From positions 1-64,000 of the forward strand of contig NW_020843886.1 in NCBI RefSeq assembly GCF_003704095.1: a stretch of 64,000 nt of DNA. Direction: 5' to 3'. Both the position numbers and the translations under genes were made by a program. How positions within the stretch are numbered: the first letter of the stretch is position 1; each line of letters starts with the position of its first letter. The stretch is from Pocillopora damicornis. Its lineage: Eukaryota. Under the pieces are notes generated by a model. The model saw nothing but the letters and a program-made list of their open reading frames with translations, had not been told where the DNA came from and made no database searches. Of the stretch, positions 1 through 39,183 are shown piece by piece.

Positions 1-754
1 GCCAAACTGCTGTCAAATGAAAACATACTGTACACAAGGTAAAGAATCAGAAGGCTGAATCCTAGGCTAAATGCTTGAGTTGTAATGCTGTCGAGTACCA
101 GGGACAGACCACGTCCATGATGGTCTTCTTGACAAAATATGGCTGAAGACACTGACTTAACCTATAAAAGAGGACTCGACATCAAAATGGTGTACATGTT
201 AGGGAAGAGATAAATGCTGTTTAGGATGTTTAGCTCTAAAAATAATCTTTATATAAATAGAAAGGATTTATTGACCCTTTGGACGACAAAGGCTGTACAT
301 ATGGTATATAAGGGCCAAGAGACAAGTCAAATCAGTGAAAGAAATAATTAAAAAATACAACATGACATGGTTATAAACCATAACTGTTTGAAGGCAGACC
401 CGTTAGCTATTTGCAAGACTCGACCCAGTACATTTAGACCAGGTTGTAAGTGTAGCCTGCCTACAACTCGGCGACGCGTCCTCCTGCTTCCACTCTTACT
501 CCAGATTTTCACCAAAAAATGCAGAAACGTAAACACTCTGCGTGGGTTGGCGGTTAAATTTTGTTCGACTGATCTAGAAGCGTTTAACATCCATAACAGG
601 TAGTACTTTTTAGTTAGTTCGAGCATCATAAGAATCATCGAGGCATCGAATTTACATAGAATTTACCATTGAGGCATCGAATTTTCTAATTTCGCTCGAA
701 ATAACGACTTACCAGTAGGCAGACAACAGCGATCGCAGAGAAAATGTTTCCCAT
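1..754 (-). CDS. TNFR-cluster receptor A, 5' part (signal peptide, CRD1-start remnant, putative TM); runs off the window edge
   Basis: Exon 1 754-713 MGNIFSAIAVVCLL|GTAAGT. Exon 2 starts at 161 after ttttatAG and reads VKSVSSAIFCQEDHHGRGLSLVLDSITTQAFSLGFSLLILYLVYSMFSFDSSL. Exon-1 size and phase, and the CQEDH motif, match receptor C (MEICQLRHYVFFCVL|VNQANAAQVCREDQH). Confidence 0.55.
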
Positions 755-15796: not shown

Positions 15797-18700
15797 ATAA
15801 AGCTGGCAACTGAATGATGCAGTCAGAAATTTCTTTCTCTTTTCCCTTTCCACTCTTTACAACAGTGATATCTGCGATACTTGTGACTTGGTTTCCTTAT
15901 GAAGGAAGAAAGTAATAGTTGTGATTACTGGGAAGAAAACATCAGTTCCCCTACAGGAACAAAGTTCCTTGCATTTTCAAGTAGTTTTTTACTTCAAAAG
16001 AATAATAACTGACAACTTTACGACTCAATCCAGCTATACTGACCTTCATCCATTTGAAGGCTACTAAAACCTAACACCTCTCAGTAAGTGTAAACAACTC
16101 ACCATTCATGGCATTTGCAATCGAGCTCTGATTCATACACCAGCTTGGATCCTACAATGAAACAAATGGAAAATTAGAACTCTTTCAGTTGTCATATCTC
16201 TCAATCCAAAAAAATCAGAAAAACCCTGTGTTGGCAGTAACTGTACTGCTGGTAAACTCTCATTGGTGTTGTGGATTAAATTTCACAACTTTCATTGACC
16301 CATTCATATCTTCAAATTATTAGTTTCTGGTTCTAAACACAAATATGACCCCAAGCAAGAAGAAGACTAACTATAGGTGATCAAATCCTCATTAAAATAG
16401 ACTACAACAGAGGCCATTGTGTCTCCTGCAGATTAATTCAGTGAAATTTAAAATAAATTTATATTTTGTGCTATAAAATGTGCTACGTAAAATGTACCTC
16501 CTTAATAGCAGTGCTTGCATACATCAAAGTTTGATTGGATGCCTGAGTCAAAATAATAGTAGCAAAGAAGCTGCTTTTCTTTTTAGATGCTGAGCTAAAT
16601 ACCAGATTGCATCTCGGAGTTGTACTGAAAGAGTTCTTCAGTGATGCATAGCTGATTTTCTAAAAAAAAAAGAGAACAAAATGCAAATGTCTTCAAAATC
16701 ATCAAGAGATAGCAAAACTTTTAGGGATCTGAAAAGAAAGTTAATTATCAAGTTCACAATTTTAAGATCTTCAGTGAAGCTTGAAAGTTTCCATTTTTCT
16801 CAGAATCTTGCTCTGTTGTTGCACGACACTCAAACAATGACTGCAAAATACCATTTGGTGACCACTCTTTAGCTTCCAGCCATCAATATCCTTCACACCA
16901 ATTTCTACATCCTCTTCATGAATTACAGAAAAATCAAGAGATTCAACTGATGACATGGGCTTTCCTCCTTCCTTTTTCTCCTCCCTCATAACATTCTGTG
17001 GAGCAAAGGTCACACAATTTTGTTAAAATTCATTACTTACAGAAATAGATCTAACAAAATTATATAACATAAGTAACCATGATTGGAAGTTGGGATTCTT
17101 TATGAACTAGACTGGCACAATTTAAAAATCAAATTACATATACTTGTAAATACCTTAAGAATCCTAGTTAAGACTTCAATTATGTACAAAAACAGATTGC
17201 CACAGCTGGGTAAGATGTCACAAGGTTTGAAACACCTGTCCTCTTACTGAACAATTGAAAAAAAATTTATATATGAAAGAGATCTTTTGGTCTCTTCGAT
17301 GCTGAAACGCAGGGAGAAATTCAATGCCCTTACTATTGTCAATTCAGTCCTATCTAAGGAGAAAATCTGTTTTTTATCCTCAAAAGCTTACCTCAAATGA
17401 CCACTCGCAGTCATCAAAGCAGTACAATCTCACAACAAGGTCTTCTCCAACTCTGGTGTCATTACAAAATGCCATGACCTTCATTCTCTTGAATACTGGT
17501 AAAGATTGCTCTTCACAGTGTCCAACCACTGCAAATGTTGCAAAATAATGTGTTTTAAAGCTAACATGGTTGTTTTTGGGGAGGAATTCTTTTATTCCAC
17601 ATGACTTACTACCCTTCACATAACTTACTACCCATTCATCATTTTTCAACTCCTTCAAAATGATTTTCCACTTATTTGGAGAAAGCACCATGTTTGCACC
17701 ATGAGGTATCTGAAGCTCAAGGGGTTCCAGCAACTGGTTCTTTGAAATAAAAATAAATGCTGGACTTAGTGGAAATTCATCATCCTCAAGAAATCCAGGT
17801 AAATCCAGCCCTTCTGGTGTGGCATGCAGTACCAAATCACGTGGCAAGTGTTGAAGAGTAGACCTGTTGTTATCAAGAGAAACAACCTCAACTCCTGTCT
17901 TTTCAAATACCATATGACCTGGGCTATGTTGTTTTGGACACTCCAACTCTGCCTCCTTACTACCTACGAAATAAAATATGCATATGCAAAAATACGCATA
18001 AAATTTGTATATCGTAAACACAAGGTAGCTTTTTCAGAAAAACAGTATGGGAAGACTCCATTTTCTAGTCCTTTCTACAAAACAAATAAAAAATAGAAAA
18101 CAAAAACAAATAAACAAACAAAAAGTGAAAAGAAGTGAGGTACTCTGTTTTTGTTTAAAACGCTAGGTGTAGTACTCTATACACAAGAGTTTTAAGCCTA
18201 TAGGCACTGAAAACATAAAGCAATGAATACCAATTAGAGATAATAAATGAATGCTTAACTTACCTGCAAGTGAAGAAGTTTTTCTAATTTCAGCACAGTC
18301 CTTCTTTTCCATTAGCTCACAATTGTTTTCTTCATTTGGAAATGGATACTGATAGTTGCCCTCCGATAATGGTACTGAAATGGCAACCCAAATCAGAAAG
18401 AAACATATGCTCAATACAATCAATGTTGTCACCTTGTCAAGTTCGATTGAGTTCACTTTATAGTTTTCTTGTTCTACAGTTTGCAGCTGCCCAAACTGTT
18501 CATTTAAGCCCAAAGATGGAATACGAGGCTTAATAGCGAGCCCCTGAGAGTTCTCTGAAGACGCCATTCCTTCCTTTATACAGTTCACGATACTTTGACT
18601 GTCGCTAAAACCACAACACCAGAAGCACTGTTCACAAGCTTTTGAGTGGTCGTTCAGATAAAACCCTGGCATGCACTCACCACAAATGGTATTTGATTTG

Positions 18701-33879: not shown

Positions 33880-34764
33880 ATGTGAATGTAACCATATTGA
33901 TGTAATTTCAGTTATGGTTAATTACGTCATGCTCGCCAAACAAGAACTCCGTTCTTGAGAATGGATCAGAATAAACATAACAACCTAAAATTACTTTATA
34001 GTGTGAATGAATGGACTCTTCATTGTTCGTTTCACCACTTAGCACAATACTTTATCACACTTGCTTTTGTGGTTATCAAACATTACTCATACAAGAGATC
34101 ACTCCCACTTAATCTATACAATCATTAGCTTTAGATAGATAACGTACAATATCCTATGTTCAGAACCTAATAGGCCATACCCTTTACACTTTTGATGGCA
34201 AACTACTACTACTTAAATATACTTAGTAGGAGTTGAGTTTCAGATCTAAAAGTCTAAGAGTCTCACACTCAATTTTCTGTGTAAAAACTAATCATGTTCA
34301 CTTTTCAAAAACACTCTTTCATCTAATTTCTTAGTTTAAACTAGTTGCACGGTCAAATAGAGACAATATGACACTCAGTGTAATACATCTAGTTCATGAT
34401 GGCTAAAGTTCAAGTTTTGAAACCCATAATTTCTGAAGACCATCAGGTTTAATATGAAGCTTTTTAACTGAACAATACAGTCAGTGAAGTCTTGCTCTTT
34501 TCCCTTTCTACTGTTGCAACAGTGATATCTGCTATATTTGTGACTTGATTTCCTTCTGGAAAAAGGAAGAAAGTAGCAACATGGCCAACATATAAAGACT
34601 TTCTGCATCAGTTAAACTAATATTGTTATCTTTTCTCTATGGAACAAATTCTCTGAAAGTAATTTTTACTCTTAAGTGGATTACTTGGAGGGAAACATTA
34701 ATTCTCCTCAGGCACATAACTCTCTGCACTCTAAGTAGTTTTCAATTCAAAAAGAATGTTCAAC

Positions 34765-35730
34765 AACTATTTACCAAAGTGGAGGTGGTTAGTGGTAGAT
34801 ATTTACTGAGCCACAAAACAATAATGCGAATACATGTATCCACTGCAAGCCACTGACTGAGATGAATAGTTGTTTTAGTGTATACTAAAACACTGTGAAC
34901 ATATAACAATAAATTGTTTTAACTTATTTATTCCTGCAACAATTACGATATTTTCAGGGACAAATCCTGAGCATATTGCTCGGAGGTGAATAACGATGGA
35001 TTTGTGCACTTTGAGTCACCAATCAGCATGCCCCTTCAACACTATCTACTGTTTTAGTTTCCGTATATGCTAATTATTGATACTTTTATTAAAACTCATG
35101 AGGCCAACAGCCTATCAAAACATTACTAAAACATCTTGTGTATGACCCTTGATACCTGGTAATCTATGACCATTCTGAAAAGTCTGGTGGTGGCTTTCAT
35201 TTCAGTCCCAGAGGAGTGCAGGGCTGAATGTGCAAGCAATTCCAATTATTGCTTATTCTGAATTGAAACTATCTTTATATAAAGGTCACCAGTGATCTTT
35301 ATATAAAGCTGTGAACATTGTCCACTTTGACTTTGAATCTTCTTTCCTCAAAGTTGGCGTCCTTATTTCTTCTTGAACTTTGCCACTTGCCAAATATTTT
35401 CTTAAGCCACTTTGTGGCATACCATGTAGATTTTGGAATAGAACTATCCAAGAACTCGCTCCCTTCCTCAGCACTTTTTGGTTTTGGGTGGCATTTCAAA
35501 TAAAAACTCTCTGAACCTTTAACAGCAGCTGAACATGGGGCACTTTCCCTTTCTAAATGTAATTAACCCTTAATACATCACGTCACGTTTATCTAAATCT
35601 CTTGAGAGGCATGGGTTTTGAAGCTGTTAAAAAAACTTGCAGCACGTATTTTATCGGCTCTAAAAACATTAGGCTCTGCCTTGTGTTTTTAAACCCAATA
35701 AAACACTGCTGCTCATTTTTAAAACATTAC
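34765..35730 (-). mobile_element. Degenerate Crypton-like (tyrosine-recombinase element) relic
   Basis: The fragment SSIPKSTWYATKWLKKIFGKWQ resembles the N-terminus of Crypton/DUF3504-associated proteins. An AACAACTATT..AAGTGGAGGTG..TAGTGGT.GATATTTAC end repeat is present, also at 38843-38891 on the reverse strand. The insertion is absent from the equivalent region of receptor C. Confidence 0.5.
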
Positions 35731-35757
35731 ATAAAGCCTAACTGACTTTCATCTATT

Positions 35758-38531
35758 TTACCCCTCAGTAAGTACAAAGAAGTCACCATTCACAGCATTT
35801 GGAAACATGCTCTGGTTTTCATAACGGATTGGATCCTACAATAAAATAAACAAATATTTAAAGCTTTATTCTAAGTTGGTATATCTCTTGATCCAAAAGA
35901 TCAGGAAAGCCCACTGATACTAATATTACACTGCTGGTAAACTCTCTTTGGTGTTGTGGATTTACTTTGACAATTTTAATCAATGCATCTATACCTTTAA
36001 GTTTAAATTATTAGTTTCTGGTGCTAAACACCAAATATGACTCTGGCAAGGAAAAAACTTTTAAAAAAATGACCAGATCCAAATTTAAATATACTAAAAT
36101 GAGACCACTGAGTCACCTGCAAATTCACATCTTGAAATTGATAATCATTTTGTGCCACGGAATGTACCACCTAAAATGTACAGTCACCTACCTTCTTAAT
36201 AGCAGTGATTGCATACACTACAGTTTGAGAGGATGCCTGAGTCAAAACAATGGTGGAAAAAAAGCCGTTTTTCTTTTCACTGGTTGCAGGGCTAAATACC
36301 AGATTGCATCTGGGAGTTGTACTGAAAGAGTTCCTCACTGATGCATAGCTCATTTTCTAGATAAAGCAGAAAAAAATTTAAATATTTTCAAAATCACCCA
36401 GAGATACCAACACTTTCAGGGATCTGAGAAAATTCAATTACTAAGTGTAAAAAATTAAGATCTTTGAATCATCCTTTAAATTTTTCCTCTTTTCTAAATA
36501 ACTTGCACTGTTATTGCATAGTACTCAAACAGAGTCTGCAAAATACCATTGGGCAAGCATTATTTAGCTTCCAGCCATCAACATCCTTTACAACAATTTC
36601 CACATCTTCTCTGTGACTAAGAGAAAAATCAAGAGATTCCACTGATGACATAAACTTTCCTCCTTTCTTCTTCTCCTCCCTCAAAAGATTCTGTGGAGTC
36701 AAGTCAAACAAGTTTTATCAAATTTATTAACACAGAAATAGATCACACTGTTATAAAATAACTAACCATGACTGGAGGTAGGATGTTTGATGAACTAGAC
36801 CAGCACAAATTTAACATCAAAATTATAAATAACTGCAGTTACATGATAGATTCTAACTAGACTTCAGTTATGTGCAAAAAGCTTCTGAGAACTTGGTAAC
36901 ATGTCACATAAATTAAAATACCTAGCCTCTGATTATATCAAGATTTTTACTCCTAATAGAAGGAAATTTTATGACCCAAAGAGATCTTTTTGTAGATTGA
37001 AATAGAATAAATTGAATCATCATCTATTTATTGCTTAATATTAGGTGAGGATCTTTAAACTATATTAGTTATTCCCAAGAGCTTACCTCAAATGACCACT
37101 CACAATCATCAAAGCAATACAGCCTCACAACAAGGTCTTCTCCAACTCTGGTGTCATTACAAAATGCCATGACCTTCATTCTTTTGAGTACTGGTAAGGA
37201 CTGTTCTTCACAGTGTCCAACCACTGCAAATGTTGTAAAATGGTCTGTCTCAAAACTAACATGGTTGCTTTTGGGGAAGAATTCTTTTATTCCACTACCC
37301 TTCACATAGCTTACAACAACCCATTCATTGTTTTTCAACTCCTTCAAAATGATTTTCCACTTATTACAAGATAGCACCATGTTTGCACCATGAGGTATCT
37401 GAAGCTCAAGGGGTCCTGTTAACTTGCTCCTTGTGACAAGATAAAATGCTGGACTTAGTGGAAATTCACCATCCCTAAGTAATCCTGGTAAATTCAGCTT
37501 ATCTGATGTGGCATGTAACACCAAATCGCTTGGCACTTGTTGAAGGGTAGACTTATTACTGTCAAGGATAACAGCCTCAACCCCTGTCTTTTCAAACACC
37601 ACATGACCTGGGCCATATTGGTTTGGATGCTCCCACTCCACTTTCTTAATACCTAAGAAATAGATCCAAAAATAATGATAAATAATAATTAGTTATAAAA
37701 ATCTGCACATGTGCAACTTGAAGGTAGCTTTTTTATATGCACATTTGATCACCAGACTTCATATACTTATGAGGTGCTCTGCCTAAAACAAAAGCAAATA
37801 AGTTAATAAGATACAAAACAAAAAATTAGCGACAAAAGGTGGGCTAGCTACTATCAAAAACGCTTGTAACAATAATTTTGAGATACGAGTGCTGATCGCA
37901 AGTACTTGAGATATATAACAATATATACAAAGGGAAAATAATTAGTTATTTAACTTGCCTGAATGTGCGGATTGAGTGGTTTCTGTACTTTCAGAAGGGT
38001 CCTTCTTTTCCAATGATAAACTGTGTCCTTTTTCAAGATTATTTAAAAATGGGCATCGACCTTTACCTTTCAAAGTTTGCCCTTGTCGTTTAGAGATGTG
38101 ATACACAGTCAGGCCAACACATAGACCTATTATAGAGGCTGTGAAAGCATCAAGTTTGACATATTCCACCAGAGAGCTTTCTTGTTTTGTAGTTTGCAAT
38201 TGACTGTTTAGAGCAAAGGACGAAAAAAGCAGCTGAAGTCCAAGCCCACTAAAAGACTCTTTCAACATCATTACCTCTTTGATACAGTCCATAAAACTCT
38301 TTCTATCGTTATGGTTACAACACCAGAAGCATTCTTCACAAGTATTTGACTTGTCATTCAAATAAAATCCTGGTTCGCACCCACCACATATGGTATCCGA
38401 TTTGGTTGAGCAATTGGCGACAATGTTTTGGCCAATGGCACAGATTTTACATGACTCTAAGGTACCATGTTGATTAACAAATGTTTTCCCTACCATTGGA
38501 CGTTCACACTTGGGTATTGCACCATCAGTCA
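35758..38531 (-). CDS. TNFR-superfamily receptor D (paralog of C): CRDs, TM, ZU5 with HFT motif, UPA, no death domain; 5' part in the gap
   Basis: Exons <38531-37959 (GC donor), 37652-37087, 36690-36547, 36356-36192 and 35835-35758; a possible terminal exon lies near 34556-34465. Each exon is homologous to the corresponding exon of receptor C. Confidence 0.82.
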
Positions 38532-39183
38532 NNNNNNNNNNNNNNNNNNNNNNNNNNNNNNNNNNNNNNNNNNNNNNNNNNNNNNNNNNNNNNNNNNNNN
38601 NNNNNNNNNNNNNNNNNNNNNNNNNNNNNNNGGCTCACCAGCACAAGAAATGGATGCCTACGTTTTTTCTTTCCGATAAAACGCCAGTGTTACGCCGCAA
38701 AATGTAACAATTGTCGCAAAATGTAATCTTTTTAAATACTTTTTGGTACATTGACATGAAAAAACTACCTTTTTTTAGTTTCTGTGTGGTACATATAAAA
38801 TATATTATGAAAGTAATGGAGAATTACCGCGACGCTTGGCGGCACGGTAAATATCCACCGCTATTCATCTCCACTTCAGTGAATAATTGTTGCATAGTAT
38901 TTGGCCAGGTTGTTTAAATGACAATTTGCAGGTACTCACTTAACGTCCTGCGATTACAATTTAATTTGGGTACCAGTAAGATTGTTTCTTCCTTAGCCGG
39001 AAATAAATCAGGTGACAATCAAGGGCTAGACCCTAGTCCTGAAGTCACCACCTTTCAATGGAGTATTGTTATTCAATTGAAACTTTCAAATTTCTGACTG
39101 TCGTGCCAGCTTATTTTCAGATTTCTATGATAACATAGAGTAATTTTTTGAAAATTTTCTATTTGTTTTATCCCCTAATATAG

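What the first reader, a model, noticed from the sequence alone, without database searches (positions are those of the whole stretch)
37234..37242. Autoproteolysis switch between paralogs: HFT in receptor D versus YFA in receptor C
Seen: at the ZU5/UPA junction D reads FETD-HFT-TFAVVG, while C (17539-17547) reads FKTH-YFA-TFAVVG in an otherwise highly similar exon. Established knowledge: PIDD1 and UNC5CL self-cleave at HF|S motifs at this position, using the His and the hydroxyl nucleophile. Inference: D is a self-cleaving receptor able to release a soluble UPA fragment, while C has lost both catalytic residues. This suggests deliberate subfunctionalisation, and the released fragment would resemble the free UPA proteins encoded next door.
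Basis: partly seen in the sequence, partly recalled or inferred. Interest (0 to 1): 0.78.

Follow-up and report, generated by a model that had tools for sequence, protein, structure and literature searches.

The report
Recent Ala-to-Thr change at decayed self-cleavage site
Two neighbouring coral (Pocillopora damicornis) TNF-receptor-like genes do differ at the spot where related proteins cut themselves, but the "intact" HFT version in gene D is a one-letter change private to this genome; every sampled relative of D reads HFA and lacks the cutting residue, so this is probably drift, not a designed switch.

Summary
On the minus strand, receptor D reads SFETD-HFT-TFAVVG (37234-37242) and receptor C reads SFKTH-YFA-TFAVVG (17539-17547).

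The position is also right. A family profile aligns the motif to UNC5B "QLG". Its Leu677 is the published equivalent of CARD8 Phe296, the residue before the FIIND cut. An AlphaFold2 model (pLDDT 88.7) puts HFT in the loop before the last ZU5 strand. D is spliced and present in RNA contigs from four studies.

The interpretation mostly fails:
- About 100 coral homologues mostly read H-[L/F]-S.
- All three Stylophora genes read HFA. So do 15 of 15 listed Pocillopora D-orthologue proteins and 10 of 10 Tara Pacific D scaffolds (codon GCA).
- A tree built without the motif columns puts a Stylophora HFA gene on both the C and the D lineage.
- The nucleophile was therefore lost before C and D diverged.
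- D's Thr is a terminal-branch GCA>ACA transition in a fast-evolving exon.
- The same transition occurs in two C alleles that lack the His.

The most likely reading is neutral drift at a decayed site in a non-cleaving, UNC5-like scaffold. A re-gain of self-cleavage in D is possible (about 0.2) but untested.

The parts
37234..37242 (-). His-Phe-Thr tripeptide of receptor D (codons CAT TTT ACA) at the ZU5 C-terminal loop. These are residues 137-139 of the exon translation.
   Evidence: In the AF2 model it lies in the loop between strands 130-135 and 140-146.
17539..17547 (-). Tyr-Phe-Ala tripeptide of receptor C (codons TAT TTT GCA) at the homologous position.
37087..37652 (-). Receptor D exon that encodes the juxtamembrane end, the ZU5 domain and the first UPA strands.
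   Evidence: RNA-contig joints at 36690/37087 and 37651/37958 in 3-4 runs. Profile match to UNC5B 3g5b, E 2.6e-15. Foldseek top hit 3g5b.
37959..38531 (-). Receptor D exon with the last TNFR-type cysteine-rich repeats and the transmembrane helix (about 38101-38148). Upstream it runs into the N gap at 38532-38631, which was left unfilled.
   Evidence: contiguous RNA contigs X1 record 3 and X3 record 22; translation; GC-AG intron 37653-37958
36547..36690 (-). Receptor D UPA exon.
   Evidence: joints in 4 runs; tblastn to Stylophora P0026 residues 588-635; Pfam UPA 32.8 bits in P0032
36192..36356 (-). Receptor D UPA exon.
   Evidence: joints in 4 runs; tblastn
34294..35835 (-). Receptor D terminal exon. 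The stop codon is at 35758-35760 and the rest is 3' UTR. There is no death domain. The stretch from Thr139 to the stop is 178 residues.
17392..17963 (-). Receptor C ZU5 exon, the paralogue of the D exon.
   Evidence: It is 100% identical in protein to P0040, from a Tara Pacific scaffold.

Best explanation
Receptors C and D are tandem, expressed Pocillopora damicornis genes. Each encodes a single-pass receptor with TNFR cysteine-rich repeats outside, and a ZU5-UPA module with no death domain inside. The tripeptide sits exactly where PIDD1, UNC5CL, NLRP1 and CARD8 cut themselves.

The wider coral family keeps His-[Leu/Phe]-Ser there. In the ancestor of the pocilloporid TNFR-ZU5-UPA clade the Ser became Ala (HFA), before C and D separated. 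Both genes therefore descend from a receptor that could not self-cleave. That receptor presumably uses ZU5-UPA as a non-catalytic docking scaffold, as UNC5A-D and ankyrins do.

Later, C changed His to Tyr in Pocillopora. D in this genome changed Ala to Thr by one G>A transition, the most likely single-base replacement of a GCA codon. This HFT state is private to this lineage. It lies in an exon where most differences from orthologues are non-synonymous, and the same change recurs in C alleles that lack the His. It is therefore most likely neutral drift at a site freed from its old constraint, not an engineered on/off switch.

Shown here: the motif, its homology to the cleavage site, expression and splicing, the states in orthologues, and the tree. 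Inferred: that HFA proteins do not cleave (by analogy with the PIDD1 S446A/S588A mutants), and that D cleaves inefficiently or not at all.
For: Site homology. The profile of the family aligns 'DHL.TF' to UNC5B 'DQLGTY' at chain index 135-140, which is Leu677. PMC3210808 states that CARD8 Phe296 corresponds to UNC5b Leu677. The AF2 model has pLDDT 88.7 with the motif in a loop before the last ZU5 strand. Foldseek hits are UNC5b (E 2.9e-6, TMq 0.63), ankyrin ZU5, rat NLRP1 FIIND 7crw (TMq 0.61) and CARD8 7jn7.

Motif survey: HLS 49, RLS 14, HFS 9, HFA 5, HLT 3, HFT only in window D and its own deposited model, YFA only in the C cluster.

Orthologue states. Stylophora P0026, P0034 and P0035 all read HFA. 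All 15 listed members of the D-orthologue cluster read HFA. Ten Tara Pacific scaffolds carry GCA where the window has ACA, at 97.2-98.6% nucleotide identity for the five aligned. One of those scaffolds also carries C about 20 kb away, which confirms positional orthology.

Tree without the motif columns: pocilloporid clade 100/100, C lineage with Stylophora P0035 98/89, D lineage with P0026 and P0034 94/90, window D nested among HFA sequences 99/98. The whole tree needs only 4 changes at the nucleophile column.

Other points. dN/dS of the D exon against orthologues is 0.57-1.85. Two C-type Tara scaffolds carry the same ACA codon in a Tyr-Phe-Thr context. PIDD1 S446A/S588A is autoproteolysis-defective (PMC7883297). 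A canonical motif is not sufficient in the analogous GAIN domain: ADGRB2 (HLS) and ADGRG5 (HLT) are not cleaved (bioRxiv 10.1101/2023.03.12.532270).
Against: His and Phe stayed conserved in the D lineage and in Stylophora after the Ser was lost, so the strained loop may still be pre-organised. A hydroxyl residue put back there could then cleave. Ser, Thr or Cys can all serve as nucleophile in this reaction class (PMC3210808, PMC9162469).

A Pocillopora-only C/D duplication is disfavoured but not rejected (AU p = 0.09), although Ala remains ancestral under that topology too.

Only 15 of the 24 members of the D-orthologue cluster could be read. No second P. damicornis individual was genotyped base by base. 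dN/dS rests on 8-16 differences. No biochemical data exist for any member of this family.
Confidence: 0.72

Rival explanations
1. Atavistic re-gain. In the P. damicornis lineage the single Ala>Thr change restored autoproteolysis in a site whose His and buried Phe had been kept. D would then be a self-cleaving TNFR-ZU5-UPA receptor, while its HFA orthologues and paralogue C are not.
For: D has the full H-F-[S/T] triad at the homologous loop. His and Phe are conserved in all HFA relatives. Thr is an accepted nucleophile in cis-autoproteolysis generally. D is expressed. The exon shows an excess of non-synonymous change, which could reflect selection.
Against: The change is private to one lineage and is the most likely mutation of a GCA codon. 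The same change occurs in C alleles that lack His. The catalytic environment had been unconstrained since before the Stylophora/Pocillopora split. In GAIN domains a canonical motif is not sufficient for cleavage. There is no effector domain (DD or CARD) on the would-be C-terminal fragment.
Confidence: 0.2
2. D retains the ancestral self-cleaving state and C lost both catalytic residues after the duplication, giving subfunctionalised paralogues.
For: In this genome alone D reads HFT and C reads YFA. The wider family keeps a Ser or Thr at this position.
Against: Every other member of the D lineage sampled reads HFA. That covers two Stylophora genes, 15 Pocillopora proteins and 10 scaffolds. The Stylophora co-orthologue of C reads HFA too. 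Keeping Thr as ancestral would need at least three or four independent Thr>Ala losses, against a single gain.
Confidence: 0.04
3. The ACA codon is an assembly or sequencing error, and D really reads HFA like its orthologues.
For: It is a single base, and the only genomic source read here is this assembly and the protein model derived from it, P0032.
Against: Runs of a 2024 study hold 98-100% of the exon's sampled 31-mers. RNA run X1 shows no T>C at 37236 among its fully listed T>C differences.
Confidence: 0.04

Closest known systems
UNC5A-D netrin receptors (UNC5B cytoplasmic domain, PDB 3g5b)
   Same: Single-pass receptor with a cytoplasmic ZU5-UPA module. It is the best sequence-profile match (E 2.6e-15) and the best fold match. 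The site homologous to the cleavage motif is non-catalytic in UNC5B (Gln-Leu-Gly), as it is in the HFA/YFA coral proteins.
   Different: The ectodomain is TNFR cysteine-rich repeats, not Ig/TSP. There is no C-terminal death domain. D carries His-Phe-Thr rather than QLG.
PIDD1 and UNC5CL (HFS autoproteolysis at the end of ZU5)
   Same: The tripeptide sits in the same position: a loop before the last ZU5 strand, at the ZU5/UPA junction. D has His at -2 and Phe at -1, as they do.
   Different: The nucleophile is Thr, not Ser, and it is not conserved in orthologues. There is no death domain on the C-terminal part. Cleavage is untested. PIDD1 S>A mutants do not cleave, which is the state of D's orthologues.
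NLRP1 / CARD8 FIIND (SF|S)
   Same: ZU5-UPA fold (Foldseek 7crw_A TMq 0.61 and 7jn7_B). A buried Phe precedes the scissile bond. The -2 His is dispensable there, so C's Tyr alone would not abolish cleavage, but its Ala would.
   Different: FIIND releases a UPA-CARD effector after the N-terminal fragment is degraded. D's tail has no CARD or DD. In CARD8 the fragments stay bound after cleavage.
Cleavage-resistant GAIN domains (ADGRB2 HLS, ADGRG5 HLT)
   Same: They are a precedent that an intact H-x-S/T motif at the right place does not guarantee self-cleavage. GAIN domains also appeared among the fold hits (4dlo, 8oek).
   Different: They are extracellular, belong to a different domain family, and have a different hydrophobic residue context.

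Membership tests
ZU5-UPA supramodule proteins (UNC5 / PIDD / ankyrin / FIIND) | ZU5 beta-sandwich domain | tested here: met
   Family profile against PDB: UNC5B 3g5b E 2.6e-15, ZO-1 ZU5 1.6e-5, ankyrin 5e-4. AF2 model pLDDT 88.7, Foldseek top hits 3g5b and ankyrin ZU5. Pfam ZU5 itself is below threshold for D (14.9 bits against a cut-off of 21).
ZU5-UPA supramodule proteins (UNC5 / PIDD / ankyrin / FIIND) | UPA domain directly after ZU5 | tested here: met
   Pfam PF17217 scores 32.8 bits (cut-off 27) on P0032, D's deposited model, at residues 253-342, starting just after the motif. The same hit is found in P0026 and P0114.
ZU5-UPA supramodule proteins (UNC5 / PIDD / ankyrin / FIIND) | C-terminal death-fold domain (DD or CARD) | tested here: not met
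   The RNA-supported reading frame stops at 35758-35760, 178 residues after the motif. There is no DD or CARD hit.
Autoproteolytic ZU5 (PIDD1 / UNC5CL / FIIND type) | Ser/Thr/Cys nucleophile at +1 of the scissile bond | tested here: met
   D has Thr139, codon ACA. C does not meet this feature (Ala, GCA).
Autoproteolytic ZU5 (PIDD1 / UNC5CL / FIIND type) | Buried Phe at -1, homologous to CARD8 Phe296 / UNC5b Leu677 | tested here: met
   HMM alignment column combined with PMC3210808. Phe is present in both C and D.
Autoproteolytic ZU5 (PIDD1 / UNC5CL / FIIND type) | His at -2 (PIDD/Nup98 type; not required in FIIND) | tested here: met
   D has His137. C has Tyr, so C does not meet it.
Autoproteolytic ZU5 (PIDD1 / UNC5CL / FIIND type) | Nucleophile conserved among orthologues, as expected for a functional site | tested here: not met
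   HFA is found in 3 of 3 Stylophora genes, 15 of 15 listed D-orthologue proteins and 10 of 10 D-type Tara scaffolds.
Autoproteolytic ZU5 (PIDD1 / UNC5CL / FIIND type) | Observed cleavage into N- and C-terminal fragments | not testable with these tools
   This needs protein expression or proteomics.
TNF receptor superfamily | TNFR_c6 cysteine-rich repeats in an ectodomain followed by a TM helix | tested here: met
   C ectodomain exon: PF00020 E 5.8e-21. Exons of D orthologues carry PF00020. D's visible part scores 20.8 bits, below threshold, and the rest is hidden by the N gap. The TM helix lies at 38101-38148.

The most novel reading that the evidence does not exclude
P. damicornis receptor D has re-acquired ZU5 self-cleavage through a single Ala>Thr reversion in a catalytic loop whose His and buried Phe were kept through a long non-cleaving interval. 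That would create a natural on/off polymorphism of receptor autoproteolysis between closely related reef corals (HFT here, HFA in the Tara Pacific Pocillopora and in Stylophora). It would also be a tractable natural experiment on how easily this chemistry is lost and regained.
Probability: 0.2. Interest if true: 0.6.

Novelty: new member of a known kind. Interest (0 to 1): 0.3.

Why it matters
The proposed "autoproteolysis switch between paralogues" would have been a neat case of subfunctionalisation in a coral cell-death or immune receptor. The survey shows instead that the whole pocilloporid TNFR-ZU5-UPA clade had already lost the nucleophile, so the C/D contrast in this genome is a late and probably neutral difference.

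Three things remain useful:
1. A clean map of the site, homologous to UNC5b Leu677 and CARD8 Phe296.
2. The observation that most coral relatives keep H-[L/F]-S, including a clade with canonical HFS. Those relatives are the better candidates for self-cleaving TNFR-like receptors.
3. A naturally occurring HFA/HFT allele pair that makes a cheap test of whether one hydroxyl residue is enough to restore ZU5 autoproteolysis.

Tried and rejected
- Pfam on the D and C exons at E<=0.01 gave no ZU5 hit. At E<=1, ZU5 is below threshold. Homology was therefore established by profile and by fold instead.
- phmmer of the single exon against PDB found nothing. Only the family profile reached UNC5B.
- Two pattern scans of JGI metagenome contigs for the motif-flanking DNA, with the codon left degenerate, found nothing. 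Orthologue DNA came from ENA Tara Pacific scaffolds instead.
- The look-up of encoding contigs for P0049, an HFS relative, found no record. I therefore could not check whether the HFS clade is TNFR-linked.
- Rosenblum & Blobel 1999 and Tinel 2007 are not held in the paper library. I have no checked source on Ser>Thr mutants of Nup98 or PIDD, and I make no claim from memory.
- An AU test of a Pocillopora-only C+D clade gave p = 0.09. That topology is disfavoured, not rejected, and the conclusion that Ala is ancestral does not depend on it.
- blastp of the neighbouring 'free UPA-like' exons against receptor UPA regions gave no significant hit. Structural similarity was not tested.
- The spliced D model was joined only inside a local script, to read the frame and find the stop. 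It was not sent to any search or folding tool. Searches used single exons by reference or database proteins.
- The N gap at 38532-38631 was left as it is.
- I could not read the model's coordinates, so the His-Thr geometry was not measured.
Full report
**1. Observation**

Both receptors are encoded on the minus strand. Translation of 37090-37500(-) reads ...SNHVSFETD-HFT-TFAVVGHCEE..., and HFT occupies exactly 37234-37242 with codons CAT TTT ACA. The paralogous exon reads ...NNHVSFKTH-YFA-TFAVVGHCEE..., with YFA at 17539-17547 and codons TAT TTT GCA. The C and D loci are paralogous over about 4 kb. The ZU5 exons are 85% identical in DNA and 75-78% in protein.

**2. The genes**

The deposited protein RMX53360.1 (pdam_00018690, Pocillopora damicornis; P0032) matches the D exons at 100%. 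The genome has 234 Mb in 4393 contigs. The window is therefore P. damicornis.

RNA contigs from four independent studies lie on D with joints that define these minus-strand exons:
- 37959-38531, which runs upstream into the N gap at 38532-38631. The gap was left untouched.
- 37087-37652
- 36547-36690
- 36192-36356
- a terminal exon running down from 35835

Three introns are GT-AG, and intron 37653-37958 is GC-AG. I joined the exons only in a local script to read the frame.

The frame gives TNFR-type Cys repeats, a TM helix (38101-38148), a linker of about 50 residues, ZU5, UPA, and a stop at 35758-35760. There is no death domain.

Pfam calls were as follows:
- UPA is above threshold in D's deposited model (32.8 bits against 27), starting just after the motif.
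- TNFR_c6 is strong in C's ectodomain exon (E 5.8e-21).
- ZU5 is below threshold for D (14.9 bits against 21).

**3. Is this the autoproteolysis position?**

Yes. A profile of 23 relatives hits the UNC5B cytoplasmic domain (3g5b) at E 2.6e-15. It aligns the family's 'D-H-L-x-T-F' to UNC5B 'D-Q-L-G-T-Y', so the middle residue aligns to chain index 137, which is Leu677. D'Osualdo et al. state that CARD8 Phe296, the residue before the SF|S cut, corresponds to UNC5b Leu677. They also place the motif on a loop just before a long beta strand at the end of ZU5 (PMC3210808).

An AlphaFold2 model of the D exon, built with 66 aligned homologues, has mean pLDDT 88.7. It places His137-Phe138-Thr139 in the loop between strands 130-135 and 140-146. 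Foldseek returns UNC5b first (E 2.9e-6, TMq 0.63), then ankyrin ZU5 domains, rat NLRP1 FIIND (7crw_A, TMq 0.61), CARD8 (7jn7_B) and several GAIN domains.

A His-Phe-Ser tripeptide undergoes an N>O acyl shift driven by the Ser hydroxyl, and Ser, Thr or Cys can serve as nucleophile across this class. The -2 His is replaced by Ser in NLRP1 and CARD8 (PMC9162469). PIDD1 S446A/S588A does not cleave, and Unc5CL uses the same mechanism (PMC7883297).

**4. The comparative survey reverses the polarity of the story**

Three protein searches gave about 100 coral homologues. The states at the aligned tripeptide were:

| State | Count | Where |
|---|---|---|
| HLS | 49 | widespread |
| RLS | 14 | widespread |
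| HFS | 9 | one clade |
| HFA | 5 | pocilloporids |
| HLT | 3 | one clade |
| HFT | 2 | window D and its own deposited model only |
| YFA | 2 | C cluster only |
| other | rest | mostly a distant subgroup with Leu at the last position |

The family as a whole therefore conserves a hydroxyl residue here.

The pocilloporid TNFR-ZU5-UPA genes do not:
- All three Stylophora pistillata genes (LOC111318904, LOC111336429, LOC111337437) read ETD-HFA-TFAVVG.
- The 90%-identity cluster of D orthologues has 24 members from Tara Pacific coral metagenomes. All 15 readable members read HFA, at 92-95% identity to D.
- Ten Tara scaffolds from ten samples carry GCA where the window has ACA. The five aligned are 97.2-98.6% identical to D across the exon.
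- One scaffold (TARA_SAMEA6008964 scaffold_945) carries both a C exon 99% identical to the window's C and, about 20 kb away, the HFA D exon. These are therefore positional orthologues.

A maximum-likelihood tree of 52 sequences was built with the three motif columns removed. It gives these groupings:
- a pocilloporid clade (100/100)
- a C lineage made of Stylophora P0035 (HFA) plus Pocillopora C (98/89)
- a D lineage made of Stylophora P0026 and P0034 (HFA) plus Pocillopora D (94/90)
- window D nested among HFA sequences (99/98)

Ectodomain identities agree with this. C is closest to P0035 (75% against 57%), and D is closest to P0034 and P0026 (63-65% against 50%).

Only four changes at the nucleophile column are needed on the whole tree. 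Forcing all Pocillopora C and D sequences into one clade costs 20 log-likelihood units (AU p = 0.09). That is not formally rejected, but Ala is the parsimonious ancestral state under that topology as well.

The inferred sequence of events is:
1. H-[L/F]-S became HFA before the C/D split.
2. His became Tyr in Pocillopora C.
3. Ala became Thr (GCA>ACA, one transition) on the terminal branch leading to this genome's D.

**5. Is the Thr meaningful?**

Three observations argue for drift.
- The D exon differs from its orthologues mainly by non-synonymous changes: 7 non-synonymous and 1 synonymous against L004, and 11 and 5 against L005-L008. dN/dS is 0.57-1.85. T139 is one of 7-11 replacements.
- G>A is the transition that turns GCA into a Thr codon, so Thr is the replacement most easily produced by mutation.
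- Two Tara scaffolds carry a C-type allele reading KTN-YFT with the same ACA codon, in a context without the His. That allele also has a 19-nt gap relative to the window's C, and gene callers split its exon into two ORFs.

In addition, an intact motif is not sufficient in the analogous GAIN domains. ADGRB2 (HLS) and ADGRG5 (HLT) do not cleave.

Against drift, His and Phe have stayed conserved in all HFA proteins. The strained loop may therefore still exist, and one hydroxyl residue might be enough to restore cleavage. I put re-gained self-cleavage at about 0.2.

**6. Reality of the allele and expression**

Runs of a 2024 study hold 98-100% of the exon's sampled 31-mers, and RNA runs hold 93-95%. 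For RNA run X1, the summary counts five T>C differences, all five are listed, and none lies at 37236. The depth table indicates that the bin is covered. The Thr allele therefore appears to be transcribed in an independent sample, though I could not inspect that base directly.

**7.

Even if D cleaves, release of a soluble UPA fragment is not automatic. In CARD8 both fragments remain associated after processing. D's 178-residue C-terminal part has no DD or CARD. A quick blastp found no significant similarity between the neighbouring 'UPA-like' exons and the receptor UPA regions. Structural similarity was not tested.

**8. Verdict**

The interpretation as an ancestral-activity-kept versus lost switch is not supported.

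The most likely picture is a clade of UNC5-like, non-cleaving TNFR-ZU5-UPA receptors, in which one genome's D copy has drifted back to a hydroxyl residue. The residual novelty is the natural HFA/HFT pair, plus the wider family's conserved H-[L/F]-S, which marks other coral relatives as better candidates for self-cleaving TNFR-like receptors.

No N was filled.

Noticed in passing
window 37087-37652 compared with L004-L008: The D ZU5 exon differs from its Tara Pacific orthologues almost only by non-synonymous changes (7N:1S and 11N:5S; dN/dS 0.57-1.85). C's exon, by contrast, is 99-100% identical in protein to some Tara alleles. D may be under relaxed or diversifying selection.
   Followed up: partly
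L009 and L010 (Tara scaffolds), positions about 1600-2261: A C-type allele reads KTN-YFT (same ACA codon as D). It has a 19-nt gap relative to the window's C, and gene callers split its exon into two overlapping ORFs. This may be a frameshifted C allele.
   Followed up: partly
proteins P0045-P0052, P0054, P0085 (HFS); P0056, P0058, P0059 (HLT); P0033 (Desmophyllum, TNFR + HLS): Sister clades of the pocilloporid genes keep a canonical His-Phe-Ser or His-Leu-Ser/Thr at the ZU5 cleavage position. They are better candidates for self-cleaving coral ZU5-UPA or TNFR-ZU5-UPA proteins. I could not check whether the HFS clade is TNFR-linked.
   Followed up: partly
window 3-200 (-): The first exon of 'receptor A' matches the N-termini of P0004 and of Stylophora LOC111337448 (P0028) at 83%. 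Those are short ZU5-UPA proteins without a TNFR ectodomain that read HLS. The rest of A lies off the contig start.
   Followed up: no
L003 = G000:C4113:819-1346 (+): This is the only other ZU5 exon of the family found in the genome's own assembly. It has 32% identity to D and reads D-NLT at the motif position, so it lacks the His.
   Followed up: no
window 37653-37958 (-): The intron between D's TM exon and ZU5 exon is GC-AG rather than GT-AG. The joint is supported by RNA contigs in three runs.
   Followed up: partly
window 37959-38531 and 35758-36356; protein P0032 (RMX53360.1): The deposited gene model for D is partial. Compared with the RNA contigs it skips the transmembrane segment and mis-joins the last UPA exons.
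   Followed up: partly
window 34459-34562 and 15807-15896 (-): The Stylophora orthologues have a further C-terminal exon that still matches downstream of both C and D. In D the match is split across two reading frames and lies inside what the RNA contigs show as a continuous 3' terminal exon, so D's tail seems shortened.
   Followed up: no
window 37409, run X3 loose end: An RNA contig switches from D sequence to C-like sequence at 37409. This is probably an assembly chimera caused by long identical k-mers shared by C and D, and a reminder that contig-level evidence near the motif is fragile.
   Followed up: no
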